Shown here: positions 5,341 to 46,680 of the stretch, one piece after another | Layout: each line of letters opens with the position of its first letter | Position numbering within the stretch: position 1 is the stretch's first letter | From: Takakia lepidozioides | Lineage: Eukaryota > Plantae > Bryophyta | Assembly: GCA_030704615.1 (NCBI GenBank) | Contig: CM060734.1 | Coordinates: 7,812,001-7,876,000 of the forward strand | DNA length: 64,000 bases | Direction: 5' to 3' | Translations under genes and position numbers: made by a program | Notes under the pieces: model-generated | The model's database searches: none | Told to the model about the DNA's origin: nothing | Seen by the model: the letters and a program-made list of their open reading frames with translations, nothing else

Positions 5341-5349
5341 TAGCAACCA
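5341..5349 (+). other. Putative stop-codon readthrough site TAG CAA CCA between ORF1 (gag-PR-DNMT) and in-frame RT
   Basis: Matches UAG-CAR-YYA. Same site in B (9805-9797, TAG CAA CCA) and C (42718-42726, TAA CAA CCA). The frame after the stop is open into RT in A and B. Confidence 0.72.
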
Positions 5350-6390
5350 CGGGACGCGTCCTCTACCTCTAAGCCCACTGGACTTAAGGTTGTAGTTACG
5401 GAGGACAATTGGGAGCCTGACATTGGACCCATTGTCACCGGAGGAGAGAGACGACATATACGGCGGTTCCTGAGGGCTTACAGGAATTGCTTTGCCTTCA
5501 GTTTGAAGGACTTGGGAGCACTGAAGGGTCAAGAGATCCGTATTGAGTTGGCCACTGACACGCCAATCTTTCGGAGACCCTATAGATACAGTGACATGGA
5601 GAGGTCTTTGATTCAGATGAGGACTCAAGATCTCTGGGAGGCAGGTTTGGTGGAGCTCTCTGGTGGAGAGTATGCTTCAGCCACAGTGATGCCAGCCAAG
5701 AAGGATGTCTATGGCAATTGGACGGAGAGACGTATGTGCGGTGATTACCGGCCTGTAAATCGTCAGACCAAGTCCGATAAGTATGCCATGCCAACACCAG
5801 AGGAGATCTTTGATGCCATCGGGCATGCTAAGGCCTTTAGCACTTTGGATTTACGATCCAGATATCACCAGTTGCCAATCAAGGAGGCGGACAAGCAGAA
5901 GACGGCATTCTGGGGGATCAATGAGCACGGCAAGGATTGCCTATATCAGTGGCGGTTCTTACCATTTGGGCTTAAGAATGCTCATGCAGAGTTTCAGAGA
6001 GTCATGGATAGGATTCTAGCAGGGGTGGACTTTGCTCGGTGCTACATAGATGACATCATCATCTTTAGTGTTACGATGGAGGAGCATGTGAGACACCTTC
6101 AGGTGGTATTGGAGCGCTTGAGAGCGCACGGATTGAAGTTGCATCCGGGGAAGTGCAAGTTTTTCCACAACCAGATTGAGTATCTGGGTCACATGATATA
6201 TCCTGGAGGATTGGGGGTACAGCAGACTAAGGTAGAGGCCATTGCACAAATTCCACGCCCCACGGATGTGAGCCGAGTTCGAGCTTTCATGGGGTTGGCA
6301 AACTATTATAGACGGTTTGTCAAGGGATTTAGTACCATTGCAAACGCTCTAACCAAGCTGACCAAGGTGGACCAGGAGTGGCAGTGGGAG
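5344..6390 (+). pseudogene. pol: Reverse transcriptase of copy A (Ty3/Gypsy-type), truncated before RNase H
   Basis: RMCGDYRPVN, FSTLDLRSRYHQ, LPFGLKNA, CYIDDII, YLGH, FMGLANYYRRFV. Confidence 0.93.
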
Positions 6391-7184
6391 CATGAAGGGC
6401 AAGCCTGGCAGCTCTGGAAAAGGGAAGAGGTCCATGGTTTCATTGTCAAAGGTGGAATTGTACCTGATGTGATTCTGAACAATGCCCTCGTGGACATGTA
6501 CGCCAAATGTGGGGGCATCAAGGGCAAGCCTGCCAGCTCTGGAAAATGGAAGATCGGGTCTATGGTTTCATTGTCAAAGCTTGCATTGTACGTGATTGTG
6601 ATTTTGGACAATGCCCTCGTGGACATGTATGCCAAACATGGGAGCATCAATGGCAAGCCTGCCAGCTCTGGAAAAGGTTCCGATCAGGTCCATGGTTTCA
6701 TTGTCAAAGCTAGAATTGTACCTGACTGTGATTCTGGACAATGCCCTCGTGGACATGTATGCCAAATGTGGGAGCATCAAGGGCAAGCCTGGCAGCTCTG
6801 GAAAAGGGAAGAGGTCCATGGTTTCATTTGTCAAAGCTGGAATTATACCTGATGTGATTCTGGACAATGCCCTCATGGACATGTATGCCAAATGTGTCAG
6901 CATGAAGGGCAAACCTGGCAGTTCTGGAAAAGGGAAGAGGTCCATGGTTTCATTGTCAAAGGTGGAATTGTACCTGATGTGATTCTGAACAATGCCCTCG
7001 TGGACATGTACGCCAAATGTGGGAGCATCAAGGGCAAGCTTGCCAGCTCTGGAAAAGGGAAGATCAGGTCCATGGTTTCATTGTCAAAGCTGGAATTGTA
7101 CCTGATTGTGATTCTGGACAGTGCCCTCGTGGACATGTATGCCAAATGTGCGAGCATCAAGGATGCGAAGGCAGTTTTCCAACA
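6384..7184 (+). repeat. Tandem array of six 125-130-bp units derived from a PLS-class PPR gene fragment
   Basis: Units start at ~6384, 6509, 6638, 6768, 6894 and 7019. Each encodes LEKGKEVHGFIVKAGIVPDVILDNALVDMYAKCGSIK-like text with frameshifts. The last unit continues into DAKAVF. Confidence 0.9.
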
Positions 7185-8241
7185 CTATGGCTCTTGGAGT
7201 GATTTTGACATGTACCAGTAGAGGGGAGAAAGTGGGGCCCTCAGCAGACGAGTTGAAAAGCACTAGTTAAAAAACACTGGTGCTTGATAGGGTGTGGCAA
7301 AATTCAGGCTGGGGCGATCATTGATATCCCGGACGTAGTGTAAAAAAGACGGTTGTGAGTGAAGTACACCCGTCAAAAAAAAACCCTGCTGTCTCAAAAA
7401 GGGAGCCAGTCACAAAGAGCAAGGCACTTTGTCCAAGCTTCTCGACATCAAGCAACAATGTGGACAGGGAGGTAGTCATTGGGAACAATTTTTGTAAGGT
7501 GGTGAAGAAAGCCTTGTCTGAGGATCACTGGATATTTCTCTAGTACGGTTGGACTAGTAGAGATTGAAATTCGTGCTCAGCTCAGCTTCAGACTGTCTCA
7601 TTGTGAGGGGCCTAGGGTTGTTGTGCACATGCGCCTACGCCCTCTCTGCTGCGTGTCCCGAACTGCATGTCAAGGTTGACTGGACAGAAATGGGATTGAC
7701 ATTTTTGGCGCTCACAAATCTCTGAGACGACAAGAGATAGTTTTATCTATAGCTTCTCAAAGCAATTGTTGTACATTGTTGATTATAGTGTGACATTCTC
7801 ATAACGATATTGTCGTCAGCTGCATGAGCAGTGCATCTTTTTGGATTGTTGGTTCCCTGCCCTTGCAGCAAACTATGAGTGCCGCCGCACCCCAAAATGT
7901 CCCAACTCCTCATGGGCATGGCGTACCAATCGCACTCGTTGTGTTGGATGAGGCACAATCCTCACTCGTCCATCCTCCCACACCCAGAGTAGGTGAGTCC
8001 CTTCCCACTTGAACCTCTTGGCTCGTTATAGGATCCGATCTCTTTCCTTAGCAGTCACACTGGCTGTTGTCTCTCATGTACGAAGATAGGCCAACACTGC
8101 TGCATCTTCATGCACATCCTTAGCACCACCAAGCTCCTCACTGATCTCCGGATCGTCATGCACACCATCTACTTGACCAATGCTATGGGATGGACCAGCT
8201 TGAGCTCCCATTGCTAGGATGCACAAAAAGGCAGATGTATG

Positions 8242-9802
8242 TCATCCTGGCACCATCTCCTCATATGTCTCACCATGCCACCAAACTCTAGTATCATCAT
8301 GCTCTGGATTACGACTCAATCCATCTGCATCCCGATTGACAATACCGGCTCGATGCACCACCTGGAAGTCGTACTCTTGAAGCATAAGTGCCCACCATGC
8401 AAGCTTCCCTGTAAACTTGTCTGACTCTATCAACCACTTCAATGGTTGGTGATCTGTGACAAGGGTGAAGAGATTGACATAGAGGTAGCATCTGAAATGT
8501 GCCACTGCCCATACCGCAGCTAGACACTCCCCTTCATATGAACTATACTTCGCCTCGGCATCATTGTTCGAGTGGCTAGCATATGCCACTACGAACTCTC
8601 TTCCCTCATCATCCACCTGTGTGAGCACTGCTCCAATCCCCAACATACTCCAATCCGTATGTAGCTGAAAAGACCGCCCCCGAATACACCGCCTCAGAAT
8701 AGGTGCAGAAGTCAATCGAGCCTTGAGTTCCTCAAAGGCTTCCTCCTGTTCCTCCTCCCACTGCCACTCCTGACCCACCTTGGTCAACTTGGTAAGAGCC
8801 TTTACAATGCTGCTAAATCCTTTGACAAACCGTCGATAGTAGTTTGCCAACCCCATGAAAGCAGGAACTATGCTAACATCTATGGGGCGTGGAATGCGTG
8901 GAATGGCCTCCACCTTCGTCTTTTGAACACCCAATCCTCCAGGGTATATCATGTGGCCCAGATACTCAATCTGGTTGTGGAAGAACTTGCACTTCCCAGG
9001 GTGCAATTTCAACCCGTGCGTTCTGAAGCACTCAAACATTACCTGAAGGTGTCTCTCATGCTCCTCAACCGTAGCACTAAAGACGATGATGCCATCAATG
9101 TAGCACCGGGCGAAGTCTAGCCCCGCGAGAATCCTATCCATGACCCTCTGAAACTCTGCAGGAGCATTCTTCAGCCCAAACGGTAAGAACCGCCATTGGT
9201 ACAAGCAATCCTTCCCATATTGGTCAATCCCCCAGAATGCCGTCTTTTGCTTATCATCCTTTTTTGATTGGCAACTGGTGGTAACCGGATCGCAAGTCCA
9301 ATGTGCTAAACACCTTTGCATGCCCAATGGCATCAAAGATCTCCTCTGGAGTTGGCATGACATATCTATCGGACTTAGTCTGACGGCTCACAGGACGATA
9401 GTCCCCATACATCCTTCTTTCTGTCTAATTGCCATAGATATCCTTCTTAGCTGGCATCACCGTTGCCGAGGCATACTCCCCGCCTGACAACTCCACAAAT
9501 CCAGCTTCGAACAACTCCATAGTCCGTGACTGGATCAATAACCTCTCCATGTCACTATACCGGTAGGGCCTTCGAAAGATTGGCGTGTCACTTGCCAAAT
9601 AAATACGAATCTCCTGACCCTTCAAACTCCCCAAATCCTTCAAACCAAAGGCAAAGCAATTTCTATAAGCCCTTAGAAATCGCTGGATCCTCCATCTCTC
9701 TCCTCCGGTGACTGTAGGTCCAACATCTGGTTCCCAATTGTCCTCAGTGACTGCAACCTTGGGTACACCAGGCTTGGAGGTAGGAGATGAATCCTTTGGT
9801 TG
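8242..9802 (-). pseudogene. pol: RT-RNase H of copy B
   Basis: LPFGLKNAPAEFQ, CYIDG (degenerate YIDD), RNase H LHTDWS...EGECLA...LVTDHQPL...NRDADGLSR; stops and frameshifts present. Confidence 0.92.
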
Positions 9803-10199
9803 CTAGATAGCAACCTCTTGGGCCTTGTCTGCCCAATCTGACTGTGGCGTAGCCTCCACTTGCTCCGCCATAGCCACCTTGAGAACATCCTCTGAGCAAG
9901 AAACATTCTCAACCTCTTCAAAAACATTGGCCACTTTTGCTTCTAACTGATCCTTAGTGTATGGCTCTCCCCACTCTTCATATTGCTGCTTGAGAGATCC
10001 AAGGGCTATCTCTTTGTGCATCTCATCCCACATCTGCCATGGGTGTTTGCAACCCACGATCTTGTGCTCGCCCCCACTCACTGCCTCAACCGTCCCGGTT
10101 GGCAGGGAGGATGCACCATCCAATGGGAGTGTAGAAGTAGCCATCAATGCTTGCAATCTCCGTTGCTCAACCATGCACAAGCCAATTATCCATGTCAAG

Positions 10200-10970
10200 C
10201 AATTTAGATCCATTGCCTAACCCAACACTTGGCATCGTGATGCCTCTGACAGAGCTGTAGTGCCCGTGGCAAACCCCATTGCCCGCTCGCGCTCATCCGC
10301 ATTGGGCTCCACCAATTGCTGTAGCACACTGTCCCAAATCAACCCAAGACCATTGTCTCGAAAAGCATGAGACGAGGGAAAGCTCATGAGCGTAGGCAAG
10401 GCTGTACGTGGCTGCCCCACTCGATTGACCACTGCTAGAGGTGGACAGTCATCATGTCGCACCCTCTGTGGTTGCCTCCCTTGGTCCAAAATGCCCTCAA
10501 CCGTGAGATTGGGTGGCCGTTGAATGGAATCATATGCTCTCTTGAGCAGCTCTGGTGGTGCAAGATTGGTCCACCACAATCGAGGTCGATGCGCACGTGA
10601 TCCCACCGCTGCTGCATCCAATAGCACCGGTGATCCAATCCAAGACTACACCTGATGCACACTGGCCATAACCCTGGCCTGAGAGTCCCCCATAAGAGGA
10701 ACATTCTCCAAGATATAGGCTAGAGGTTGCACTTGCCTTGTCTGCAAGTCACGCAACACTCTCAACATCTCCCAAAACAAATGTGATCGTGCATCATGCA
10801 AGCCATTCCCATGACCTGCGGGAGAGTGTCATTGGCAAGGCCATCCAACTATCACCAAATCAATGGCACCATGCCGGTCCAAATCATCCGCCCCCAACAA
10901 GGTAAATGTCTGTTGGCAAGGCCTTTTGATTCCCTTGAATTGCTGAGAGAGGCAACAACTTAGAATACCG
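10200..10970 (-). pseudogene. Partial C5-MTase domain of copy B (motifs I-II removed by an ~780-bp deletion from the protease)
   Basis: GWPCQ*, YILENV, RAHRPRLWWTN, ERERAMGF and QVLG*AMDL are present. Junction at ~10975 joins LEPCP directly to the region after motif II. Confidence 0.88.
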
Positions 10971-10974
10971 GTGT

Positions 10975-13228
10975 GTGAGGGCAAGGCTCCAAATCCGCCT
11001 CTGTAAGGCCCAAGCCTGTAATTGCTGCTCTTCCCAACATCAATGGTTGTGCTCCTAAGTCCAACAAGACTCGCAATGGCCTATACCTCCCCCGGGCTGG
11101 GCCACCCAACTGAAACACACCATCCTGATTGTCCACCAGGACTACCCCAGGAGTCACCATACTGCGCTCAATGGCTGGCCTAGCTGGCAATTCCTGCAAC
11201 CTTGCAGCTGCCGCTTGCCATGGCGCAGCTATGGCTGTCTTCACCCTTGAATCCAGGGCATTCATGCATTGCATCTTATCTGCTATCCCCGGAGATAGTG
11301 CCGATGCATCACCACTCTCACAGAGTGCAGCTGCCAGTCTAAACACTGCAGCTGGCCGCATCCCCGACATTGCAATTGTCGTGGCAGAAAACAATGAAGC
11401 TTGGCAAATTGCCGTAGCCGCCCCCAACAATGTACTGGCTGCACCTTGCTTTGCAGTACCACCCACTGGCATTTCTTGAGCCATACCAACTCTCCACAAT
11501 GGCACTCGTGGTTCTACCTCTAACACACTTGGGCGAGCGGGTGCCATCGATGGCATAGTTGGCACTGTCTCAGCCAATGTGAAAGATTGTGGAAGCCTTG
11601 TCTACCGACTTGTTTCCCCTCTTTGTGGATCAAAATCCACATCCGCTCCTCTTGGCTCAGGAGCACGCGTTGCTGCAGAGTCCACATGCAATGGTCCTGC
11701 AAGTACGGCTCCACACATGAAGCCCATACCAATCTGGTCTTCCCTAGGCATAGGAGGTTGTGCAGGTGGGGCTTGAACCTCAGGCCTTAGAGCTGGCGCA
11801 ACATGAGTAGTGGCCATGGTAGCAAGACGTTGCTCTAGCTGGGCAACCTATCTACCATGTCTTGGTCATGACCTTGACTGTGACCCTGTGCTCCTTGGTT
11901 TTGGTTACGACCTCCACCACGACCTCTGCCTCCTCTACCTCTCTAGACTACATTGCCTCGTCCTCGGCCACCATTGTTCCCTTGGAACTGGCCTGGCCGT
12001 AGCTCAGGATGCAAGTCATAACAATGAGCCTCTTCATGCCCACATTGTAGTTGTGTAGGCTGTGCCTGTGCCGGCCCTTTGCCTCTCTCCGGGCAATCTC
12101 TCTTAACATGGGGTCCTCCACAATCCCAACATGTCACACCCGACTGTTGTTGGCCTGAGAATGAAGGAAGTGACCTTTGCAATTGAGATCCTCTCGGCCC
12201 TTTCCTGGCTTCGCCTGAACCCCCTTGTTGCCTTGAGCACGTTGGGGTAGTGGTTGTTGTTGGCTAGGAGCCCCACTTCGTTGTGTCTCCTTACCAAATC
12301 CCACCATGACCACTCGCTCCTCCACCATATTGAGCTCTATCCGCTCTGCCAGCAAAAACACATTTGCTAAGGTGGGTTGGGCCACTTGTAGGAGAGTTGC
12401 ATCCCGCACCCTTCTCCTCAGCTCTTTGTCCAATATCCCATACCAGATTTGGACTGCCTGAGCTTCTGTAACCCCTTGGGTTACATTTATCAAGCGCCTC
12501 ATGCGAGTGTAAGCCTCCCTTAAACTCTCGGTAGGCTTTCGTTGGAACTCTTGCAAGCTCCGCAATTTCCCCGTCCTTATCCCCTGGTTGTTTCTCCTTA
12601 ACTCCTCAAAGAACTCCACAACTGGGTTAAAGGCAGGCACGGGTGTTGGTGCTGCAGCAGGAGCTTGGGTGGATTTCCCAGCTCCTATTCCACTTGACGT
12701 CCCACTGCTGCTTGCAGAAGCTGCCGGTGTAGCTGCCAGTGTCACCACTGCCCTTGTGCCTCTAGTGATGGAGACATAGTCAGGTGACCAATACACCCGC
12801 CATTCCTCAATCTCCACCTCATGTCCCCGCCTAAACTCATGGTAATCATCCATGGGCGGCCCCTCAAGGTGCTGAAACAGCCCCTTCCATGCCATAAAAG
12901 GCGTAAACAGTTGTGGATTGCGCATCTGCTGCAAATCACACCAACTGTCAACCTCTTGTATGAAGTCATCAAGCTCGATGGTGCCCACAACTCCAGAGTA
13001 CCTACGTGGCCCCTTGGTAGCTCCGTACATCTCCTCCATCGTGTCCCACAACAATGGCACGGAAATGACTTGCACCCTCGGCGAGAATCCTCCTGACTCC
13101 GAGTCTGAACCTTCCTCAGAAGACACTGAAGGTGAAGGTGGCCTAAACCACACACCTCGTCTTGTATACCCACTAGTATCGCTGGTGCTCGTATCGGCAC
13201 TCTCCTCAGCAACTGGTGGCACCTCCGT
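10975..13228 (-). pseudogene. gag: gag + partial protease of copy B
   Basis: ORFs 12134-13222, 11943-12182, 11602-11817 and 10960-11577 are homologous to copy A gag/PR; CWDCGGPHVKRDC knuckle. Confidence 0.9.
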
Positions 13229-14014
13229 GATGAAAACTCACAACCACACCTGTTGTAAACCTGTTTCTAATCCCCATTTCCACAAGGTAACCGGGTAGAG
13301 AACCTGTTGCGGCTTATGGCTTAGACTACTAGGTTCGTAACATAAACCTGCACCTGTATCCACCGCAAGCACTCCTATGGTCTGCTGGTCATCAACCCAG
13401 CCTCACCATAAGAGAAACAATGATGGTCTGACTGGTCATCACCCCAGTCTCACCACCGACAGCATGCTCTAGGATTGGCCGGTGATAAAATCCAGACCAA
13501 CCTCCTATGAAAACAAGCGCCCACACAAAACTAACATGGTGCATAGTCAAGCATGCATGTGTGGAGGGGATCCAAACACAAGAAAATCAATACAACAACT
13601 CCCCCACACCAAAAACACTCCACAGTGTCGCTCCTGCAATAACACCCCAGCCCAAACCCGGACTGACTCTTGCCTCCATCTACGGAAAGGTTTTGGCCTA
13701 CAGAGAGGGTGGAAGACTACAAGGAAGAGAGACTAAAGCAATTCCTATTACAGCATGCTCTCATCCCACTACCCTATCTCCACACTCTCTTGCTTGAACA
13801 ATAGACAAGACTACCTTTCAAGGGTCTCTCAAATAACTCTCCAGGAGCCCTCAAGAATTTGTCTCTCAAACAATCTCACTAAGGCTCCCAATCCTTGCAC
13901 GATGGGACTCCAAAACAGTACACCAAGGCCCCAAGAGCCTGCCAAAACTTAGCCCTCGAGGACCCCAATAGTCCCTCACACAAGTCGTCAAAGACTCCTC
14001 AAGGTCGCCAAATA

Positions 14015-22830: not shown

Positions 22831-22834
22831 GTGC

Positions 22835-35341: not shown

Positions 35342-35931
35342 TAACAGAGATCCAGATGGAGTCGAGGTTCATGTTATCACACCCTGTCAACAAAAACGCT
35401 GGGTTTGGATGCTTCCGGAAAATCAGTGGAATGAGACATGTAGCCACTGGGTCTTGACTTGAGATTCCTGACTTTAAAAGGAGGTGGGAGCAGCCTTTGA
35501 GGGTCAATCGAGGGAAGAAGCATAGACTTGCATAGATTTTAGCGGTGACCGGGTTGTGTGCTACTGGGGAGTGACGCAGAACTTGGCGGGGGGCCTGTTG
35601 GACTGTTTGTCTGTGGAGAATGTTGCCCGAAGTTGCAAATATGCCGTTACTTTTTGCCATTTGAATCTCCCAGGCAATGAGCCGAGACACTGGCAGGGGA
35701 GCCGGTGGCGAAGCTTGCTGCTGGAGGATGTTGGATGTTGAAGAGCCTGACTTCCCTCTGATGATTGATGCTTCTGATTCTCATACGGAAGCCCCATTGA
35801 GAAATGACAGCGTAGTGGAAAGGGAGGCTGTCGCCTCGAGCAGCATAGGGTCTTGATGTTCCTTCCTTCTTTTGGTAGGGGGAGAGTTGGAGACTTGCTT
35901 AAGGGCAGAGTCCCATTCCTGGTAAGATGGA

Positions 35932-36246
35932 TGTCAAGTTATTTTACCACTAGTGTGAAACTAGCTAGGAAATAGTTAGTTTTGATATATTGACATTTGG
36001 GATTGACCCAAGTGTCAATCCAGGGACCAATATATGTTTGGGCACCTGACGTTGTTATCTTCACGGCAGATCGCGGTGGGCTTATCTTTCTCGAGTTGAG
36101 CCTCACCGCGTCTAGCTATGGCGCCGTAGTGTGGAGTCCCCATGGCGTGGGGTGCACTTGGCTCGACTTAATATATGAGTGATATTTTCATGTGCAAGTA
36201 TGTGAGTTTGAGAGAGCTTGTGTGCTTGTATCATTTATTTCTTTAT
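35932..36246 (+). repeat. Terminal repeat A1 (315 bp) of copy C
   Basis: Direct repeat of 44955-45269 with about 14 substitutions by eye. Confidence 0.95.
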
Positions 36247-38491
36247 CACTCGAGAAAGATCAGCTCGAGTCTGTGAGTGCCAGGTTCGAGTTAGTTGCAG
36301 CACTTGTATTTTCAGATCATGAGAAGCGGTTCAGCCTAGAGTGCAAGGATCCGTGCATGAGCCTATCCAAAGTGGATAGAGTGCAAAGGCGAACAGGTTG
36401 CAGGTTTGCAATGGATAGAGAGGCGGGTAACCTATGTTAAAGAGCGGCGTTGCATAGCTCAACGCTATGGCAACCAAGTTTGGGCTTCTAGTGTGACGCG
36501 GAGGAGATGCTAGCCACGAGTGGGCGAACTGGTGGTCGTCTTTTTCAGCTGCAGGCCGAGTTAAGGAGCTGCAGAAATGTGGGCTGCGCATGGAAAGCTA
36601 GCATGTTGCAGGTTGGTAATCAGCTCCAGGTATCTCTGCTCGAAACTAGTTGTTGCAGGTAGATGAGGAGCAGCCGAATAGTGGAGCTGCGAGGGGATGC
36701 ATCGCAGCCTGTTGGGAGCTTCAGCTCCAAGCTCATGAGGAGGTATGAGTGAAGAGAGGGGGCTGGTCCCTCTTGTGTGCAAATCAGTGCACTTGTTAAG
36801 CATGTGCTTGAGTTGGAAGTTTCAAATCTGAAACTCTAGCACGGTGAGGGCTCTTGGAGTGGCAAGAGCCGGGGCTGGAAGGGCAGCAACAAGACGTCCT
36901 AGAGCCAGGGAATGTGCAATAGAACTGCAGGTACACCAAGGTTGTAAAGGTGTGTATTTTCAGATTTGTTTTTGTGAGCTTCATGAAGAAAATGGAGCTT
37001 GTTGGGCAACATATAGCTTGCTTGTTGAGTAGGGTGCCTCTGGTGGGTCGTGAGAGCCCAAGAGAGCATGACAGCAGGTCTGGTGGCTTCGCAGAAGCCA
37101 TAGCTCGGCGGTAGCACGTGCAGGAGCAAACCCCAGCTCGGGGAGAGCTCGGGAACGCATGGGAATGCCTTGGGAACGCATGAGAACTCGTGGGGAGTTC
37201 TAGGGAACGCATGGAACAGTGGCCGTGATGGCCGTGGGGGCGGTATCACGAGATACCACGAGCCCAGGTCGTGATTGTTGACCGTGACCGTTGACCGTGG
37301 GAAGCCGTGGTGCGGACACCACGGGTGGGCACGGTGACCAGATCGTGGGGATGGTGGGCCGTGAAAGCTCGTGGGTGTGGTACCACGGGGTATCACGAGG
37401 CAGCCCATGGCCAACGAGCGCCTAGGGCGGGCCGTGAGGAGTCGTGGCGGTTGGAGCCACGGAAGGCCGCGAACAGTCAGAGTGAAAAAAATAAAAATAA
37501 AATTCACTCGTTTCGTGGGACCTTGATGGGGAGGCTGGGCTCTGAAGAACAACGGTTTTGAGCTAGCTGTTCGGCAGAAAAGTCGGAATTGCCTCCCTGT
37601 TGCATTTTAACAAAGGGGATTACTTCCCTGCAGGTAAATTTTTCGGGTTTTCAGCCCAATTCTTAACTATGGGGGAGACCAGCCTGCAGGTAATTCCTTT
37701 GGACAGAATGTTGTTGGGGCCTATATGTACCTCTATTTGCTCCATTTTTGAACCTTCAGTGAATGGCATGGTTTCCTGAGGTGGTTCCATTCTGAAGGAT
37801 GGCTGGTGAACGTAAGGGGGCACTGACAGACCCTGTGGAGGCTTGCATGGGGCCTTCGAGGCCAAGTTTCATGAGCTCGTGGAGGGCGGTTTGAGGAGTG
37901 TCCACATGATGCTCTCATGGTCATGCAAGTAAGAGAAGAGAGGAAAAAAGAGGGTGTTGGGATGAGAGCGTGCTGGGGATAGGCATTGCTTTAGCTTCCT
38001 TTCCTCATAGCTTCCCACCTTCTCTGTAGGCCGAGACCTTTCCATAGGTGGAGGCAAGAGTCAGTCCGGGTTTGGGCTGGGGTGTCCTTGCAGGAGCAAC
38101 ACGGAGTTGTTTTTGGTGTGGGGGAGTTGTTGTTTTCATTCTTGTGTTTGGATCCCCTCCACACCTGCATGTTTGATTGTGCGCCATGCTAGTTATGTGT
38201 GGGTGCTTGATTTTATAGGTGGTTGACTTGGGCTTGATCGCCGATCCAATCCTAGAGCATGTTGTCGATGGTGAGGCTGGGTTGATGACTAGTCAGACCA
38301 TCTTTGTTTTTCCTGTGGTGAGGTGGTAATGACCAGCCAACCATGGGAGTGCCTGCGGTGGATGCAGGTGTAGGTGCAGGCTATGTTAGGAACCTAGTAT
38401 TCCAAACCATAAGCCGCATCAGGTTCTCTACCCGGATACCTTGTGGAGAGGGGGTTAGAGACAGGTACCGGTTGAGTGTCAATTTATCAAC

Positions 38492-41400
38492 ACGGAGGTG
38501 CCACTAGTTGCTGGGGAAAGTGCCGGTACGAGCACTAGTGATACTAGCGGGTATACGAGACGGGGTGTGCGGTTTAGGCCACCTTCACCTCCTATGTCTT
38601 CTACGGAAGGTTCTGATTCGGATTGTGAATCAGGAGGACTTACACTGGCGGTGCAAGTTGTTTCCTTGCTATTGTTGTGGGACACAATGGAGGAGATGTA
38701 TGGAGCCACCAAGGGGCCACGTAGGTACTCTGGGACGGTGGGCACCATTGAGTTGGATGATTTTATCCAAGAGTTTGATAGTTGGTGTGACTTGTAGCAA
38801 ATGTGCAATCCACAACTATTTACACCTTTTATGACATGGAAGGGGCTGTTTCAGCACCTTGAGGGGCCGCCCATGGATGATTACCATGAGTTTAGGCGGG
38901 GGCACGATGTGGAGATCGAGGAGTGGAGGATGTACTGGTCACCCAACTATGTCTCCATCACTAGAGGCACTAGAGGCACAATGGCAGCAGCCACACCAGC
39001 AGCTTCCACGAGCAGTAGTGGGACTAGTGGTACAACACTACGACCTCCACCCAAGCTACTGCTGCACCAGCACCAGTGGCAGTGTCTGCCTTCAACCCTA
39101 TTGTGGAGTTCTTCGAAGAGTTGAGAATGAACTACCAAGTGGTGAGGACAGAGAAGTTGAGGAGCTTGCAAGAGTTCCAGAGGAAGCTTACTGAGAGCTT
39201 GATGGAGGCTTTCACTCGCATGAGGCGCTTGATTAATGTAACCCAAGGGGTTATGGAAGCTCAGGCAGTCCAATTATGGTACGAGATATTGGACAAGGAA
39301 CTGAGGAGAAGGGTACGGGATGCAACTCTCCTACAAGCGGCCCAACCCACGTTAACAAATATGTTTTTGCTGGCAGAGCGGATAGAGCTCAACATGGTGG
39401 AGGAACGAGTGGTCATGGTGGGATTTGCTAAGGAGGCACCATGGGGTAGTGGTACTCCTAGCCAACCACTACCTCAACGTGCTCAAGGCAACAAGGGGGC
39501 TCAAGTGAAGCCCAGGGAAGGACAGAGAGGACCTTAGATGCAGGGGTCTCTCCCTTCATTTGCAAGCCAACAACGGGCGGATGTGGTGTGTTGGACATGT
39601 GGAGGACCCCATGTCAAGAAGGATTGCCCAGAGGGAGGCAATGGTTTGGCACCGGCACAGCCTGCACAGTTGCAGTGTGGGCATTGTGGCAAGTATGAGC
39701 ATGGAGAGGCCCAGTGCTATGGTTTGCATCCTGAGTTGCGCCCAGACCAGTTCCAAGGGAATAATGGTGGCCGGGGGCGAGGTGGAGCAGCCCAGAGAGG
39801 ACGAGGTGGAGGCCAAGGGCAAACTCAACATGGCCAAGGACGCGGAGGTCAGGGTGGTGACCAAGGCATGGCCAACCGGCTTCAGCAGCTAGAGCAGAGG
39901 CTCGCTGCCATGGCCACAGCTCGGGTGGTACCGGCTCCAAGGCCGAATGGTCCACCTCCTGCTCCTGAAGGAGAAAACTTGGGAGACATGGGATTCATGT
40001 GCGGGGCAGCACTACCACTAGTGGGGGGTGCCACTACCACTACCACTGTGGGTGGGGCACCACTACCACTAGTGTCGGGCACCACTACCACTATCATTAT
40101 GTGCGGGGCATGACTACCACTAGTGCAAGTGGAGTCAGCTGCGGCAGTGACTCGAGGAGCAGCACGAGTTCCTGAGCCACGGGGTACGGAGGTGGAGATC
40201 CACAACGTGGGGAGGCAAGCCGTCAGGCCAGGCCTCCTCATTCATTCACATTGGCGGAGACACTGTCGACGCCATCCATGGCACCTAGTTCTCGCCCGAC
40301 TGTTGACGAGGCGGAGGTTACTATGCATTGGGGAGAGCTATATGGGCAGCACCACTACCTAGTGTTGCCAAGGCTACGGCAGCTAGTGTGCTGCTGGGGG
40401 CGGCCACAGCTGTGTGCCAAGCTCCATTGTTCTCGGCTACCATGATTGCGACGCCGGGGGTAAGACCAACTGAGGTGTTCAGGCTGGCAGCTACACTCTG
40501 TGAGAGTGGGGATGTTACTTCATCTTCTGTGGAGATAGTGAGAGGTGTAGTGCCGGAGGGATCCTTGGATATGAGGGTCAAGACTGCCACGGCGGCGCCA
40601 CGGCAAGCTGCAGCTGCCAGGTTGGCGGAGCTGCCAGCTAGGCCAGCCATTGGGCGCGCCATGGTGATACCTGGAGTTGTCATGTTAGACAACCAGGATG
40701 ACATTTTCTGTTTGAGTGGATCGGCAGGCAAGAGATACCGGCCACTGCGGGTCTTGTTGGACTCGGGAGCTCAGCCATTGATGCTGGGCAGAGCTGCTAT
40801 TGCAGGCTTGGGCCTCACGGAGGCGGATATGGAGCCGTGCCCTTTCCAGATACAGACATATCTGGGAGGATCAGAACAGGCTCGGGGCATGACACGGCGT
40901 GAGTTGACTATCAGACTACAGCCGGATCATCCTACAGATAGCTCAGTGATGAGAGCCAAGGCCATTGTGACAGACGCGGTCTCGTACGATGTCCTTGTTG
41001 GTGGGGCAGTGTTGTACCCCATGGGCTTCACCCTGGATTTTTGGGAGGAGTCAGCTTCCTATAGGCCTGGATGGCAGTCAGGGGAGGGCTGGCGTGTGCA
41101 ACTCCCTATGACGTTCATAGGAGGAGTTGCGGTTGCCCAGCGAGGCAAGATGCCGACACTGGCAGCATTTACAGCTGCAGTGACTTGGCCTGGAGAGTTG
41201 TTGGATGACAACACTCATTCAGAGGATGTGTCACCTCCAGGAGAGCAAGATGACATGCATGGTATGGCGGAGTTGCCTGTCATGGTTGCTCACACTCCAT
41301 TGTGGGGCTCGAGCAAGGATTTGCAGTGGGTTGCTGATTGACGGGTGCAACAAGCCTGGGTAGAGGCTTTTGTACCGTCAGGAGAGGAGGAGAGTGCGGG

Positions 41401-42720
41401 TATTGCACCAGGACCACCTCAGTTGTCACCATTGGACACCACACCGATCGTGTGATAGTGTCCGGATGAAGGCATTTGCCTTCTGGACTTGTTTGGCGGG
41501 ATCAGCACCGGATTGGCTGCTGTGCTATAGGCAGGTGTACGGGTACGACGTTACTTGTATGTGGAGAGGGATGAGATTGCACGACGCATCTCACTCCGTC
41601 ATGTTGCTCCGTTGGTGCAGCAGTACCCTGAGTTGTTGCCAGTGTCTGCGGTTCGTGGATATCAACAGGCCTTGCCAGCACACATTTCGTTGCTGAGGGC
41701 GCACGATTTGGAGCGGGTTAGCTCCATTGATTTGATAGTGGCAGGTTGGCCCTGCTAAGGGCATTCATTAGCCGGGCATGACAATGGATTGCGAGACTCG
41801 AGGTCGGGTCTGTTTTGGGAGATGGTGCGGGTTTTGCACCACTTACAACTTCATCAAGCTGTATCTCCAGCATACATCTTGGAGAATATGCCACTGATGG
41901 GCGATTCTCGGGCCAGGGTGATGGCCAGTGTGCATCAAGTCCGGTCGTGGCTTGGGTCAGCAGTGTTGCGGAATGCAGCTGCAGTGGGGTCACGAGCTCA
42001 TCGTCCACGGTTATAGTGGACTAACTTGATGTCACCCGCATTGCTCAAGCGTGCATTTGATGGGGTGCAGCGGCCAGCACACCTCACAATGGATAGCATT
42101 TTGGACACATGGAGGCAGTCTCAACGTGTGAGATACGATGACCGTTCGCATTTGGCAATGGTCAATAAGGTGGATCAAGCACGAGCAGCACTACCTACGT
42201 TGCTCAGCTTCCCAGGATCGCATGCTTTTCGGGATAGTGGACCTGACCTCTTGTGGGATGCTCAGTTGCAGCAGTTAGTGGAGCCTAATGCCGACGAGCG
42301 AGAGCGGGCTATAGGTTTTTCCACTGGGACCACGGCGGTATCTTCTCTTTCTGAGGCATCACGTCGTCAGGTGTTGGGGCAAGCGATGGATCTCAATTGC
42401 TTGACCTGGATTATCAGCTTGGCTATGGCTGAGCAATGTAGAGTGCGGAGTGCACTTCCCTTAACGGTCTCTCTGCCTACCGAGACGGTACAGGCAGTGA
42501 GTGGGGGCGAGCCGGTGAGGACCACGGGGTATAGACATCCATGGCACACATGGGAGGTGCTCGAGGTTCAGAGGGAGTTGGCAGCCAAGGCGGTTGTGAT
42601 GGATGAGGTTGGGGATTCTTCTCGGGTCGAGGAGGTCCTCAAGGATGAGATGATGGGGCAGGATGAGGCCTTATCATTGACTGAGCAGACAGGGAGTACT
42701 GCCATGAGGTTGCGGCATAA
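38492..42720 (+). pseudogene. ORF1 (gag-protease-DNMT3-like) of copy C
   Basis: Collinear with copy A. DNMT motifs I-X at ~41470-42410, with premature stops in and around the domain (41339, 41453, 41456, 41528, 41756, 42014). Confidence 0.92.
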
Positions 42721-43339
42721 CAACCACGGAACGCGTCTCCTACCTCTAAGTCTGCTGGACTTAAGGTTGCAGTTACGGAGGACAATTGGGAGCCTGACAT
42801 TGGACCCATTGTCACTCGAGGAGAGAGATGACGTATACGGCGGTTCCTGAGGGCTTACAAGAATTGCTTTGCCTCTCGTGCTACGGTGGAGGAGCATGAG
42901 AGACATGTTCAGGTTGTGCATCAACCGGGTTTGGTCAATAGGGATGCGGATGGATTGAGTCGCAATCCATGCACGAGCCAACATGATGACACTGGAGCTC
43001 GGTGGCATGGTGAGACGGACAAGGAGATGGTGCCGGGATGGCATGCATCTGCCTTTTTGTGTATCTTGGCATCGGGAGGTCAGGTTGGACCTACAACAGG
43101 GATGACTGTAGACAGAGTGTCTGAGGACCCCGAGGCTAGTGATGAGCCAGGTGGTGCCAGAGATATACATGAGGATTCGGTTGTGTTGGACTACCTCCGC
43201 ACTGGAGACACGACAGTTAGTGTGACTGCCAAGAAGAGGGATCGGATCCTGCAACGAGCCAAGAGGTTCAAGTGGGAGGGGATACATCTGCTTCGAGTGT
43301 GGGAGGATGGTCGGGTGAGGATCGTGCCTTACCCAACAC

Positions 43340-44555
43340 AGCATGCACCCCCAACCCCCATGAGAAGTTGGGGCATTTTGGAGTGCGACGCACTAAAAAT
43401 CTACTGCAGGGGCAGTATTGGTGGCGTGGTATGCACACAGAGGTGCAACAGTTTGTGGCTAAGTGCATGGTGTGTGACAAGGTGCGTGCTTTATTTAACG
43501 CCCCTACACCACAATTGCATCCTTTACCCATTATGGCATTGGGCTAGAGGTGAAGTCTTGACTTCGCAGGGCCGTTGCCACAGATGATGCGCCACCACAG
43601 ATATGTGTTGGTGATGGTGGAGCACTTCTCCAAGTGGATTGAGTTGGTTCCATTGCCTGACAAGACTAGTGAGGGGGTTGCGTATGCATTCTTGGATCGT
43701 GTGCTTAGCCGATTTGGTGCTTCAGCTGAGGTACTCACGGACCAAGGGAGAGAGTTCTTGGGGGAGTTTCAGGCTTTGTGTGATAAAGCCTTGATAGACC
43801 ACCGTACCACTTCTCGGGATCATCCTGAGGCCGATGGCTTGGCAGAGAGAGTGGTGCAGACGGTAAAGAGGGGTTTGCGCAAGTATGGCTTACAAAAGGG
43901 ACACCTAGGAGATTGAGATCTTCAGGTACCTTGGTTAGCCATGGGCTACAGGTCTAGCAAGCAAGCATCACTTGCCTCTTTCTCACCATATTTCATTCTC
44001 TTTGACCGAGAGCCGGATTTGCCTACATCTATTCGCAGGGAGGCTGCAGTAGTCCTTAGCCCTGATGATCCGGATGTGTGGACACAAGCATGTGCCCAGC
44101 GGGCAGAGTTGTTCAAGAGAGTCATGCCTATGGCTTTTGAGAATCTTGCTATTGCCCAACACTGAGACACATTGAGGTATGTCACTATATGTGGAGTGTA
44201 TCTGCAGCAGACAGCACCTACGACCTTGGATGTCACATCATGACATGTGATTCTAAGGGTCGAGAAGGTGTTGCCTTCAGGAGTGTTGATTCTGGAGGGT
44301 TGAGATGACATGGTATGGAAGGACCATGTGCGCAATTGTGCGCCATGTCACCTTCCACATGTGGATGGGAGGATAGATCCCATCCTTGCAGTGGTACCTG
44401 CAGGGTTGCATTGCATGCTATGTGGGCATGCTCGTGGTGCCGCCACTATGGTGGTGTGTGATGGATGTTCAAGAGGTTGGCATATGGGATGCTTGACACC
44501 ATCTCTTGAGAGGGTTCCTGATGGAGATTGGTTATGTCCACACTGCTTGGGATAG
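43340..44555 (+). pseudogene. DDE integrase with C-terminal PHD finger, copy C
   Basis: HHCC (HEKLGH...CMVC); catalytic SLDFAGP, VLTDQG, LAERVV; C-terminal WKDHVRNC then C4HC3 PHD CMLC...CDGC..GWHMGC...WLCPHC (44412-44546); stop 44553-44555. Confidence 0.92.
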
Positions 44556-44813
44556 TGGCAGTGGATATGACTAATGGTAGCTAACAAGACATGGGAGGCC
44601 AAGCTCGTAAGAGTCAATACCCGAGATCTCAGGCTCAAGTTCACAGGTTGCAAGACGACAACTAACGATGGGGTAACTCTTGTACCCGACCTCTTGATCT
44701 ATCGAGTTTGAGTGTAGTAAGGACAGTGGTGGAGGACGTAGTGAGGCTATGATCACTATCACATCTTGTGGCTACCTGGACTTAGAGGGACCTAAGCGCC
44801 AGCTAGAGAGACG

Positions 44814-44952
44814 ATTGTGATGGACTAGTGGCTACACTAGTGGTGACTAGTGATTGTCTAGTGGCAGCCTAGTGGTGCACTAGTGGTGGACTAGTGATAG
44901 ACTAGTGTTTGGTGTGCACATGTGTTGTGTAGCGATATGTATGCGCACGACA
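44814..44952 (+). repeat. Internal repeat B1 of copy C (copy of the element 3' end)
   Basis: ATTGTGATGGACTAGTGG...GCGATATGTATGCGCACGACA, matching 45270-45568. Confidence 0.93.
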
Positions 44953-44954
44953 GC

Positions 44955-45269
44955 TGTCAAGTTATTTTACCACTAGTGTGAAACTAGCTAGGAAATAGTT
45001 AGTTTTGATATATTGATATTTGGGATTGACCCAAGTGTCAATCCAAGGGCCAATATATGTTTGGGCACCTGGCGTTGTTATCTTCACGGCATATCGCGGT
45101 GGGCTCATCTTTCTTAAGTTGAGCCTCACCGCGTCTAGCTATGGCGCCGTAGTGTGGAGTCCCCATGGCGTGGGGTGCACTTGGCTCGACTTAATATATG
45201 AGTGATGTTTTCATGTACAAGTATGTAAGTTTGAGAGAGGTTGTGTGCTTGTGTCATTTCTTTCTTTAT
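44955..45269 (+). repeat. Internal repeat A2 of copy C (copy of the element 5' end)
   Basis: Matches 35932-36246; joined to B1 by the dinucleotide GC. Confidence 0.95.
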
Positions 45270-45568
45270 ATTGTGATGGACTAGTGGCAGCCTAATGATG
45301 GACTAGTGGCTGCACTAGTGGTGGCTAGTGGCAGCCTAGTGGTTGGGCTAGTGGCAGCCTAGTGGTTGGACTAGTGGCTGCACTAGTGGTGGCTAGTGGC
45401 AGCCTAGTGGTGGACTAGTGGCTGCACTAGTGGTGACTAGTGGTTGTCTAGTGGCAGCCTAGTGGTGCACTAGTGGTGGACTAGTGATAGACTAGTGTTT
45501 GGTGGGCACATGTGTTGTGTGGTTGTGGACATCGATGTAGTTGTGTAGCGATATGTATGCGCACGACA
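45270..45568 (+). repeat. Terminal repeat B2 of copy C, with expanded CTAGTGG array
   Basis: Same start and end as B1, with extra CTAGTGG-based units; ends GACA followed by the TSD TGGA. Confidence 0.93.
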
Positions 45569-46680
45569 TGGACTTGAATAGGAAAGGAGGCTGCAGGTTG
45601 AGGGGGTGATTGGCGGTATGGTTCTGATTGAGGGATGGGTTTAGAAGGCAGACCATGGTTTTGAATAATAGGAGGATGGCCCACCTGTTCCTGAACTCTG
45701 GCCATTCTTTTCCTCTTTGCCGTGGGGCAGTGTGATCTGAGATGACCAGAAAGGCCACAATAATAACAGGCTGAAAGAGGCTGTATCTTTTGAAACTTTG
45801 ACCGAAAAATAATTCCCCTGATCATCAATTGGCAGTCTGATAAATTGAGGCAAGATCTTGTCTGAGGGCATCATAACTACTATCTTTGCAAAACCATTTT
45901 CATGAGGTCTTGATGCAATCGTAGCCCCCCTCTAGAAATGATCCTTCCGCAGCGAGGCCAAGCTCATGCTTGGATCAAAAACCGCCAGGCATCCTAAAAA
46001 CGCTCCAAAGAAATTCCCTATCGTTGGCAGACAAAACAAATATTGGTCCGGAATATATGGGAGGGCGATTATCCGGGGGCTCCAGATCTTACCGTTAATG
46101 TTGCCCATACTCTTGGACCAGGGAAATATGTTGACGTTGAACCCATGCAAATGGGGATTGAAAGCCAAGGCTCCGTCTTCCGCCTTTTTGGACTCCAGGA
46201 GGACAGAGAAGAAGCCGCGACATCTTGGATGGCAAAAGTGCTGCTGCAGGTCTCCAGTTCCCCCTAGGTGCCTGATTGCCCAGTCGTGAGCGTGGTTCCT
46301 GTCAACTTTCTTGCCAGGAAAGTGCAAGAGGACCCCATTGCTTTCAATATAAGCTATGTTCGAGTAGATTTGGGGCAATTCGACTGGCAGCAGAGGGTGC
46401 TCTTTTGCCATCTCTCTTTGAAAACCTGCATTGTCGTTTAGAGATTTGTCCGGGAGGTCTTTGTCCAGGGAAGCCGGAGGGAAGCCTGTAGGACTGAGGG
46501 CATGAGGATTGACTTCGCGGGGGATGATGGCCCTGCCAAAAACCCTAACCAGTTGGGATTGGGGGGGGCGAATACGAGGGACCTTGGGGGATGAGGCCTA
46601 AAGACTGGACTTGGTGAGCCATGAAGAAACCAGTTCCTGTAGATAGGTGAAAACGCCTCGCTTCAACAAAGTTGTTGTGG
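45569..46680 (-). pseudogene. LINE ORF1 N-terminal part (zinc knuckle)
   Basis: CYYCGLSGHLRSHC; upstream IFPW...IIALPYIPDQY..CLPTIGNFFG resembles plant L1 ORF1; continues at 35931 beyond copy C. Confidence 0.75.

What the first reader, a model, noticed from the sequence alone, without database searches (positions are those of the whole stretch)
35932..45568. Retroelement family combining a DNA methylation writer, a chromatin reader, a readthrough-gated Pol and non-LTR-style split termini
Seen: merging copies A, B and C gives the consensus 5'-A-long leader-gag-PR-DNMT3-like-TAG CAA CCA-RT-RH-IN-PHD-B-gc-A-B-3', with TG...CA ends and a 4-bp TSD. B is clearly diverged from A and C yet has the same layout, so the layout is a maintained family trait rather than a one-off capture. 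Inference: the element makes MTase at Gag-like levels, could methylate its own cDNA or insertion site, and may use the PHD to choose chromatin. Prior art from memory, to be verified: DNMT-bearing retrotransposons were reported in dinoflagellates and the charophyte Klebsormidium. I do not know of this whole combination being described in a land plant.
Basis: partly seen in the sequence, partly recalled or inferred. Interest (0 to 1): 0.93.

Follow-up and report, generated by a model that had tools for sequence, protein, structure and literature searches.

The report
Gypsy retrotransposon with DNMT, permuted LTRs
This is a decayed copy of a very abundant bryophyte jumping gene of the Ty3/Gypsy type that carries its own DNA methyltransferase and a histone-reading PHD finger; its odd "split" end repeats turn out to be a conserved, circularly permuted form of ordinary LTRs shared with relatives from green algae to mosses. 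The kind was briefly described in 2018 from the alga Klebsormidium.

Summary
The window has three dead copies of one family. Copy C (35932-45568) alone has termini, integrase and PHD. Copies A and B supply RT/RNase H. All three have the DNMT3-like domain and the stop followed by CAA-CCA.

Copy C reads A1...B1-GC-A2-B2 with TG..CA ends and a TGGA duplication. This is not a one-off:
- A young Scenedesmus element has the same plan (repeats 99.8-100% identical, duplication CGGC).
- So do 26 distinct metagenome loci.
- Seven of nine complete elements have perfect 4-bp duplications.

Three further features recur:
- The junction is a conserved palindrome, GACA-GC-TGTC.
- A G-run (polypurine tract) sits directly before B1.
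- A2|B2 is a precise fusion of the A end to the B start.

So reverse transcription should make LTRs of the form B-GC-A, and the integrated copy is a circular permutation opened at the palindrome. That last step is inferred.

"Non-LTR-style" is wrong, and Troyka is excluded. Novelty is reduced: de Mendoza et al. 2018 already noted that KnitGypsy-Dnmt3 combines Gypsy domains with DIRS-like repeats. This scan has also followed up the family several times on other DNA of this genome. What may be new is the land-plant presence, the PHD, the leaky stop and the conserved terminal anatomy with target duplications.

The parts
35928..35931 (+). left target-site duplication TGGA
   Evidence: identical 4 bp at 45569-45572
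35932..36246 (+). A1: left terminal repeat, starts TGTCA. It holds a TATA-like box near 36168-36179, so it probably contains the promoter, R and U5.
   Evidence: 95.6% identical to A2 over 315 bp; sequence
36247..37900 (+). long leader. No protein family hit and no tRNA-type primer binding site recognised.
   Evidence: the ORF1 start is estimated from the 1775-aa relative P0001
38362..40300 (+). gag-like region (decayed)
   Evidence: homologous to copy A 1074-2755, where Retrotrans_gag hits weakly (E 0.0018). The same weak hit occurs in copy B.
40655..41080 (+). aspartic protease region
   Evidence: tblastn to P0166 residues 645-781; weak Asp_protease_2 hit
41462..42451 (+). DNMT3-like C5 cytosine methyltransferase domain (decayed)
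   Evidence: tblastn to the P0166 DNMT, 43% identity, 7.9e-74. The copy A equivalent gives PF00145 1.9e-12 and DNMT3A 4.4e-11.
42718..42726 (+). stop codon (TAA here, TAG in copies A and B) followed by CAA CCA, a CAR-YYA type readthrough context
   Evidence: alignment A1; copy A at 5341-5349 and copy B at 9797-9805 on the minus strand
42874..42910 (+). internal deletion point: RT and most of RNase H are missing from copy C
   Evidence: homology to copy A ends at 42874 and homology to copy B resumes at 42910. The P0166 match jumps from residue 1284 to 1787.
43359..44300 (+). integrase (zinc-binding and DDE core), decayed
   Evidence: rve PF00665 1.5e-12 on 43554-43913; tblastn to P0166 1934-2344 at 51% identity
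44412..44546 (+). C-terminal PHD finger (Cys4-His-Cys3)
   Evidence: PF00628 4.1e-11; sequence read
44804..44813 (+). polypurine-tract remnant directly before B1. Most family copies carry a G-run here; this copy has G>A changes.
   Evidence: the majority has G at 44807, 44809 and 44811. G-runs sit in the same place in L002, L007, L062, L090, L045 and L057.
44817..44952 (+). B1: internal copy of the right terminal repeat, ends GACA
44953..44954 (+). GC spacer at the centre of the palindrome GACA-GC-TGTC (abutted element ends)
   Evidence: the same junction occurs in 13 other loci
44955..45269 (+). A2: internal copy of the left terminal repeat
45270..45568 (+). B2: right terminal repeat, ends CA. 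It holds an expanded 11/44-bp tandem array.
   Evidence: the family boundary at 45568 comes from read depth and loose ends
45569..45572 (+). right target-site duplication TGGA
1074..6396 (+). copy A (both ends missing): gag, PR, DNMT, stop at 5341, RT. About 90% identical to copy C.
7857..13775 (-). copy B (both ends missing): gag, DNMT, stop, RT, RNase H. About 70-80% identical to copies A and C.

Best explanation
Copy C is a dead, internally deleted insertion of a very abundant Ty3/Gypsy-type (Metaviridae-like) retrotransposon family of a bryophyte, probably a liverwort.

The family polyprotein reads gag-PR-DNMT3-like, then UAG-CAA-YCA, then RT-RNase H-integrase-PHD.

Shown here:
(1) The domains and their order.
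(2) The termini A1...B1-GC-A2-B2, with TG..CA ends and a 4-bp target duplication.
(3) This terminal plan, the palindromic junction GACA-GC-TGTC, a G-run polypurine tract directly before B1, and a precise A-end/B-start fusion at A2|B2 are conserved in relatives from a chlorophyte (Scenedesmus) and in 26 distinct metagenome loci.
(4) A1/A2 and B1/B2 age together within each element.

Inferred:
- A contains the promoter, R and U5, and the minus-strand primer site lies just after A1.
- Plus-strand synthesis starts at B.
- Reverse transcription therefore yields a linear DNA with LTRs of the form B-GC-A.
- Its ends are joined (A end to B start, as in a 2-LTR circle).
- The DDE integrase then nicks after each CA of the intra-LTR palindrome. 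This gives recessed CA-3'OH ends with 2-nt GC overhangs, which integrate with a 4-bp duplication.
- The integrated copy is thus a circular permutation of LTR-internal-LTR. B1-GC-A2 is the intact LTR core that regenerates both termini in the next cycle.
- The DNMT is made with Gag-PR ahead of the leaky stop in this sub-lineage.
- The PHD, of the class that reads unmodified histone H3 tails, probably tethers the integrase to H3K4-unmethylated chromatin.
For: Domains:
- The best solved match for RT-RH-IN is Ty3 Gag-Pol at 2.3e-96.
- The DNMT best matches DNMT3A, with catalytic motifs present.
- The nearest solved PHD relatives are KDM5 PHD1, PHF12, CHD4, BAZ2, BHC80 and AIRE.

Termini of copy C.

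Family boundary at 45568 and G-run in the majority of copies.

Same plan elsewhere:
- Scenedesmus sp. PABB004 locus L002 has repeats 99.8-100% identical, duplication CGGC and junction ...TCA-GC-TGTCA.
- L045, L057, L060, L062, L078 and L090 are complete split-repeat elements.
- After removing duplicates, 26 distinct loci show B-A-B after the PHD.
- Perfect 4-bp duplications: TGGA, CGGC, ACCT, ACAT, ATCA, ACAA and ATAA. L090 matches 3 of 4.
- The junction motif occurs in 14 sources.

Repeat-pair identities track each other: 95.6/96.5, 99.8/100, 88.3/88.6, 90.7/92.3 and 87.5/86.0.

The stop is conserved in copies A, B and C, in L001 and in Calypogeia L010.

Literature: KnitGypsy-Dnmt3 has 'the structure of repeats of a DIRS retrotransposon' (PMC5890265).
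Against: - No tRNA-type primer binding site was recognised after A1 in any element.
- A simple 2-LTR circle has two identical palindromes. Random choice between them predicts equal numbers of the other permutation (A-B-GC-A...B). None was seen among about 12 loci with upstream sequence. The pathway must be directional in a way I cannot explain, or the circle model is wrong.
- 19 distinct loci have a single B after the PHD. These could be B1xB2 deletions or direct 'A-internal-B' products.
- No RNA ends, circles or enzyme activities were observed.
- All window copies are dead. Within the window, termini, IN and PHD come from one copy only.
- The leaky stop is absent from some close relatives (P0166, P0012). 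It was not found in the five moss-like loci searched.
Confidence: 0.75

Rival explanations
1. The split repeats of copy C are a one-off rearrangement of an ordinary LTR element. Possible causes would be nested or tandem insertion, an adjacent solo LTR, or misassembly. On this view they are not a family trait.
For: Inside the window only copy C has termini. Some relatives are messy: L007 has extra A-B units with imprecise junctions, and L009 lacks a recognisable B2.
Against: The same A...B-GC-A-B plan with 4-bp duplications recurs in Scenedesmus (near-identical repeats) and in 26 distinct metagenome loci. The family-wide read-depth boundary falls at 45568. It was also reported for Klebsormidium.
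Confidence: 0.03
2. It replicates like DIRS/PAT/Ngaro elements. A sub-genomic transcript is copied, and the internal B1-A2 junction serves as a bridging template that restores and joins the ends during cDNA synthesis. No canonical B-GC-A LTR linear DNA is made. Only the last step differs: a DDE integrase cuts the joined ends instead of a tyrosine recombinase.
For: The repeat topology is identical to the split direct repeats of PAT/Ngaro. No tRNA-type primer site was found. Only one permutation is seen, which a directional bridging mechanism would explain.
Against: A conserved G-run lies exactly at the B1 start, and the A2|B2 fusion is precise. Both are what canonical LTR-type plus- and minus-strand priming predicts. 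RT-RH-IN is closest to Ty3, not to DIRS. No tyrosine recombinase is present.
Confidence: 0.2
3. The true element is A1...A2, an ordinary LTR element whose LTR is A. On this view B1 and B2 are just a variable tandem-repeat satellite flanking A2.
For: In the window, B consists largely of 11-bp tandem units and differs in length between B1 and B2.
Against: The duplication TGGA flanks the A1 start and the B2 end, not the A2 end. Depth stays at family level through B2 and collapses only at 45568. In other lineages B is non-repetitive and still duplicated, for example 200 bp at 100% identity in L002. The sequence before A2 is the conserved GACA-GC, not a polypurine tract.
Confidence: 0.02

Closest known systems
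KnitGypsy-Dnmt3 of Klebsormidium nitens (de Mendoza et al. 2018, PMC5890265)
   Same: A Ty3/Gypsy-type polyprotein with an un-rearranged DNMT3-like domain. Its repeat structure is described as 'the same as that of a DIRS retrotransposon'.
   Different: That element is described from a streptophyte alga only. The paper's text mentions no PHD, no leaky stop, no target duplications, no palindromic junction and no polypurine-tract position. I could not fetch a K. nitens copy, so direct relatedness is untested. The present family is from a land plant. Its DNMT sits before RT, in a sub-lineage that forms one group in the RT tree.
DIRS-order elements with split direct repeats (PAT-like, Ngaro)
   Same: A1-internal-B1-A2-B2 topology. 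The internal junction is a copy of the abutted termini.
   Different: Those elements encode a tyrosine recombinase and make no target duplication. Where they carry a methyltransferase it is Dam-like (N6-adenine). Here there is a DDE integrase, TG..CA ends, a 4-bp duplication and a C5 DNMT3-like enzyme.
Ty3 and other Metaviridae, including chromoviruses
   Same: PR-RT-RH-IN order. The best solved match is Ty3 Gag-Pol. TG..CA ends, a short target duplication, a polypurine tract, and a chromatin-reader module fused to the integrase C-terminus.
   Different: The integrated copy is a circular permutation of the LTRs, not LTR-internal-LTR. An extra DNMT domain is present.
Cleavage of palindromic LTR-LTR junctions by spumavirus and HIV integrase, and circle junctions of IS3/IS30-type insertion sequences (recalled from memory, not checked here)
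   Same: Abutted ends separated by a few base pairs act as the substrate from which a DDE enzyme liberates reactive 3'-OH ends.
   Different: In those systems circularisation creates the junction. Here the palindrome is encoded inside the LTR, and circularisation would create the other (A|B) junction. No biochemical evidence exists for this family.
Troyka (Kojima 2025, PMC12440569)
   Same: An atypical Gypsy-like lineage defined by its termini.
   Different: Troyka has 3-bp duplications and CG..CG termini and is found in animals. Here the duplication is 4 bp, the ends are TG..CA and the hosts are green plants.

Membership tests
Ty3/Gypsy (Metaviridae) LTR retrotransposons | Pol order PR-RT-RNase H-integrase, with RT closest to Ty3/Gypsy | tested here: met
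   Pfam order in P0166, P0163 and P0012, and tblastn colinearity of copy C. Ty3 Gag-Pol 2.3e-96 is the best solved match.
Ty3/Gypsy (Metaviridae) LTR retrotransposons | DDE (rve) integrase, TG..CA ends and a 4-6 bp target duplication | tested here: met
   rve 1.5e-12; ends and TGGA; seven perfect 4-bp duplications across elements
Ty3/Gypsy (Metaviridae) LTR retrotransposons | Two identical direct LTRs flanking the internal region | tested here: not met
   The integrated form is A...B-GC-A-B. It can be read as a permuted LTR pair.
Ty3/Gypsy (Metaviridae) LTR retrotransposons | Polypurine tract before the 3' LTR and a tRNA primer binding site after the 5' LTR | tested here: inconclusive
   A G-run lies directly before B1 in seven elements. 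No TGG-type primer binding site was recognised after A1.
DIRS order (DIRS1, PAT-like, Ngaro) | Tyrosine recombinase instead of integrase | tested here: not met
   Only rve and Integrase_H2C2 were found, in the window and in intact relatives.
DIRS order (DIRS1, PAT-like, Ngaro) | Split direct repeats A1-B1A2B2 | tested here: met
DIRS order (DIRS1, PAT-like, Ngaro) | No target-site duplication | tested here: not met
   4-bp duplications
Gypsy-DNMT3 retrotransposons (KnitGypsy-Dnmt3 type) | Un-rearranged DNMT3-like C5 methyltransferase inside the polyprotein | tested here: met
   PF00145 1.9e-12. DNMT3A is the best solved match, with motifs I, IV, VI, IX and X in canonical order.
Gypsy-DNMT3 retrotransposons (KnitGypsy-Dnmt3 type) | DIRS-like repeat structure combined with Gypsy domains | tested here: met
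Gypsy-DNMT3 retrotransposons (KnitGypsy-Dnmt3 type) | Sequence-level relatedness to the K. nitens copies | not tested
   No K. nitens sequence was retrieved. Named relatives were Calypogeia, Marchantia, Closterium, Monoraphidium and Scenedesmus.
Troyka | 3-bp duplication and CG..CG termini | tested here: not met
   4 bp and TG..CA here
Chromoviruses | Chromodomain at the integrase C-terminus | tested here: not met
   A PHD finger is there instead.

The most novel reading that the evidence does not exclude
A whole lineage of DDE-integrase Ty3/Gypsy-like retroelements, conserved from chlorophytes to liverworts, integrates as a circularly permuted provirus. Its attachment site would be a palindrome (GACA-GC-TGTC) encoded inside the LTR. 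The integrase would open joined-end DNA at that palindrome. Split direct repeats would then not be a hallmark of tyrosine-recombinase elements, and 'SDR plus no TSD' classification rules would misfile these elements. The lineage also couples a DNA-methylation writer and an H3-tail reader to this cycle.
Probability: 0.4. Interest if true: 0.8.

Novelty: new member of a known kind. Interest (0 to 1): 0.6.

Why it matters
Retrotransposons that carry their own cytosine methyltransferase are rare. In the literature I could search they are so far documented in dinoflagellates and one streptophyte alga. This family shows that they are abundant in land plants (liverworts, and probably mosses) and widespread in green algae.

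The terminal anatomy documented here is a split direct repeat combined with a DDE integrase, a 4-bp target duplication, a conserved intra-LTR palindrome and a polypurine tract at B. It contradicts the working rule that split direct repeats mark tyrosine-recombinase (DIRS) elements without target duplications. Annotation pipelines will therefore misclassify or truncate these elements.

It also gives a concrete, testable model for an unusual integration pathway. Natural young copies, such as the one in Scenedesmus sp. PABB004, are available to test it.

Tried and rejected
- Troyka: excluded by its published termini.
- DIRS membership: excluded, because there is no tyrosine recombinase and target duplications are present.
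- tRNA-type primer binding site: none recognised after A1 in the window or in L002, L007 and the moss-like loci. No tRNA genes in the window.
- Leader ORFs on both strands (36183-38504): no Pfam family.
- Closterium L008, Calypogeia L010 and Marchantia L011: family fragments without recognisable termini, so uninformative for the repeats.
- L001 and L003-L005: short contigs that break at the repeats.
- L009: has A1/A2 at 100% identity and the GACA-GC-TGTC junction, but no recognisable B2 or duplication.
- L027: a single-B copy without a matching duplication.
- The stop-CAA-YYA motif was not found between DNMT and RT in five moss-like loci. I therefore do not claim it for them.
- The Logan contigs laid on the 3' end were mostly 110-260 bp. 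They gave the boundary and the majority bases but could not bridge whole repeats.
- The alternative permutation A-B-GC-A...B was looked for and not seen.
Full report
WHAT IS IN THE WINDOW

A self-comparison shows three copies of one element.
- Copy A, + strand, about 1074-6396, is about 90% identical to copy C.
- Copy B, - strand, 13775-7857, is 70-80% identical to A and C.
- Copy C, + strand, 35932-45568.

All three are broken by stops and frameshifts.

Pfam results:
- Copy A: a weak Retrotrans_gag hit, DNA_methylase at 1.9e-12 and RVT_1 at 3.6e-30.
- Copy B: the same weak gag hit, RVT_1 at 6e-22 and RT_RNaseH at 3.6e-32.
- Copy C: a weak aspartic protease hit, rve at 1.5e-12 and PHD at 4.1e-11.

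tblastn of the intact relative P0166 against copy C shows protease, DNMT, integrase and PHD in the same order. Residues 1285-1786 (RT and most of RNase H) are deleted.

Inside the window, the integrase, the PHD and both termini are seen only in copy C. Copy B cannot testify to them.

The DNMT is DNMT3-like. Human DNMT3A is the best solved match (4.4e-11). Motifs I (FGG), IV (PCQ), VI (ENV), IX and X appear in the normal order.

RT-RH-IN of an intact relative matches Ty3 Gag-Pol best (2.3e-96).

The stop followed by CAA-CCA/TCA lies between DNMT and RT. It is TAG in copies A and B, TAA in copy C, and TAG in metagenome relative L001 and in a Calypogeia fissa copy.

THE TERMINI

- A1 35932-36246 equals A2 44955-45269 (95.6%).
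- B1 44817-44952 equals the end of B2 45270-45568 (96.5% over 114 bp). B2 carries more copies of an 11/44-bp tandem unit.
- B1 and A2 are joined as ...GACA GC TGTCA..., a 10-bp palindrome.
- The element begins TGTCA and ends GACA.
- TGGA lies on both sides.

Contigs of four runs of the same organism were laid on 44300-45700.
- The family is extremely abundant: thousands of contigs matched.
- Summed depth falls about 500-fold between the 45522-45568 and 45569-45615 bins.
- 45 and 35 contigs in two of the runs continue into unrelated, mutually different sequence after 45568. That position is therefore the family's real 3' end.
- The majority of copies have G at 44807, 44809 and 44811. This restores a G-run directly before B1.
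- About half of this copy's differences from the majority are C>T or G>A.

IS THE SPLIT REPEAT A FAMILY TRAIT?

A phmmer search with the DNMT piece found 252 cluster representatives below 1e-30, many of them long polyproteins.

P0018 lies on a contig of Scenedesmus sp. PABB004. The assembly was identified through PMC12571836. That element (L002) reads:
- duplication CGGC
- A1 8761-9309
- internal region
- B1, ending at 20494
- GC
- A2
- B2, ending at 21251
- duplication CGGC

Its repeats are 99.8% and 100% identical, and its junction reads ...TCA GC TGTCA....

A scan of metagenome contigs with an integrase-PHD alignment returned 80 loci. Results from these loci:
- Six distinct loci are complete A...B-A-B elements with the same order PR-DNMT-RT-RH-IN-PHD.
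- After removing duplicates, 26 distinct loci show B-A-B right after the PHD, 19 show a single B and 2 show B-A.
- Perfect 4-bp duplications are ACCT (L045), ACAT (L057), ATCA (L060), ACAA (L062) and ATAA (L074, a single-B copy).
- L090 matches 3 of 4. L078 fits only if transitions are allowed.
- With TGGA and CGGC, that makes seven perfect duplications in nine elements examined. The chance expectation is 1/256 each.

The exact junction GACA/TCA-GC-TGTCA occurs in 14 sources.

Within each element the identities of the A pair and the B pair track each other: 95.6/96.5, 99.8/100, 88.3/88.6, 90.7/92.3 and 87.5/86.0. This is expected if both pairs are created at insertion.

The one-off explanation is therefore rejected.

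HOW THE REPEATS ARE BUILT

Three boundaries are informative.

First, B1 is always preceded by a G-run. This holds in L002, L007, L045, L057, L062 and L090 and in the family majority in the window. That is the place and composition of a polypurine tract.

Second, A1 runs into the leader, where a minus-strand primer site is expected. I could not recognise a tRNA-type site there.

Third, A2|B2 is a precise fusion of the last base of A to the first base of B, with no extra bases.

A also holds a TATA-like box 70-160 bp before its end, in the window and in L060.

Taken together, reverse transcription by the usual LTR rules would make a linear DNA whose LTR is B-GC-A. The integrated copy, A-internal-B-GC-A-B, is that molecule with its ends joined (A|B) and re-opened at the palindrome of the upstream LTR.

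Nicking 3' of CA on both strands of GACA-GC-TGTC leaves recessed CA-3'OH ends with 2-nt overhangs. That is the normal substrate for strand transfer by retroviral-type integrases, and it fits the 4-bp duplication.

This step is inference.

Problems for the model:
- A 2-LTR circle has two equivalent palindromes.
- The other permutation was not seen in about 12 informative loci.
- The 19 single-B copies may be secondary B1xB2 deletions or direct products.

A DIRS-like bridging mechanism ending in integrase cleavage remains a live rival.

OTHER FEATURES

The PHD is closest to KDM5 PHD1, PHF12, CHD4, KAT6A, BAZ2, BHC80 and AIRE fingers. From my own knowledge, these mostly read unmodified H3 tails. 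Tethering to H3K4-unmethylated chromatin is therefore a reasonable but untested guess.

Among 220 retrieved relatives, about 105 carry the DNMT between RNase H and integrase, and about 17 carry it before RT, as here. In a quick RT-RH tree of 90 sequences, the 12 'DNMT-before-RT' rows form one group with SH-aLRT 100. This group includes the Closterium sequences.

Both layouts share the split repeats and the palindrome. The terminal plan is therefore older than the position of the DNMT.

Placing the DNMT ahead of a leaky stop is not general: P0166 and P0012 are single open reading frames.

PRIOR ART

De Mendoza et al. 2018 described KnitGypsy-Dnmt3. In the legend of Fig. 4c they state that its repeats have the structure of a DIRS element while its domains are those of Gypsy. 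A 2026 preprint cites 'streptophytes (Gypsy-DNMT3)' as known.

Curation guides still treat split direct repeats as a DIRS mark without target duplications.

In the searchable library I found no paper on these elements in land plants. I also found none on their target duplications, palindrome or polypurine-tract position.

This scan has already followed up the family on other DNA of the same genome for the DNMT, the PHD and the leaky stop. Two unfollowed notes report split repeats on other copies.

VERDICT

This is a real element and a true family trait. The core combination (DNMT3, Gypsy domains and DIRS-like repeats) is already published for an alga, so this is a new member of a known kind. 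The conserved anatomy of the permuted LTRs, with target duplications, is the part worth pursuing.

Noticed in passing
window 1-898: Tandem array with a period near 51 bp (84-91% between copies) just upstream of truncated copy A. It is not similar to the 51-bp array inside copy C at 39997-40125.
   Followed up: no
window 6384-7192 and 22832-23771: A satellite with a unit of about 125-130 bp replaces the 3' part of copy A right after RT. It recurs, inverted, around 22.9-23.7 kb.
   Followed up: no
related proteins P0001-P0220: There are two placements of the DNMT domain: RT-RH-DNMT-IN-PHD (about 105 proteins) and PR-DNMT-RT-RH-IN (about 17). The second forms one group in the RT-RH tree (SH-aLRT 100). 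Both share the split repeats and the palindromic junction.
   Followed up: partly
L006 1-18357: A long-read metagenome contig whose name ends in _c is a 2.2-fold repeat of an 8262-bp unit (A-internal-B-GC) at 99.8% identity. It is either an assembler path through the B-GC-A junction or a real tandem or circular form of an intact element (2358-aa ORF).
   Followed up: partly
L007 8592-18801: A complex array, A-B-A-internal-B-A-B-A, with imprecise junctions. One has an extra GCTGTC and one lacks GCTGT. It may reflect self-insertion at the palindrome or heterogeneous end joining.
   Followed up: partly
L014, L015, L018, L022, L074 and others: 19 distinct metagenome loci carry a single B after the PHD (form A...B). 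L074 still has a perfect 4-bp duplication (ATAA); L027 does not.
   Followed up: partly
window 44300-45700: Relative to the family majority, copy C differs mainly by C>T and G>A transitions (39 of about 82 listed places). This is the signature expected for deamination of methylated cytosines in a silenced repeat.
   Followed up: partly
window 45270-45568 versus 44817-44952: B2 holds about 20 copies of an 11-bp unit, against about 8 in B1. The repeat that should be copied from B1 has changed length since insertion, or at it.
   Followed up: no
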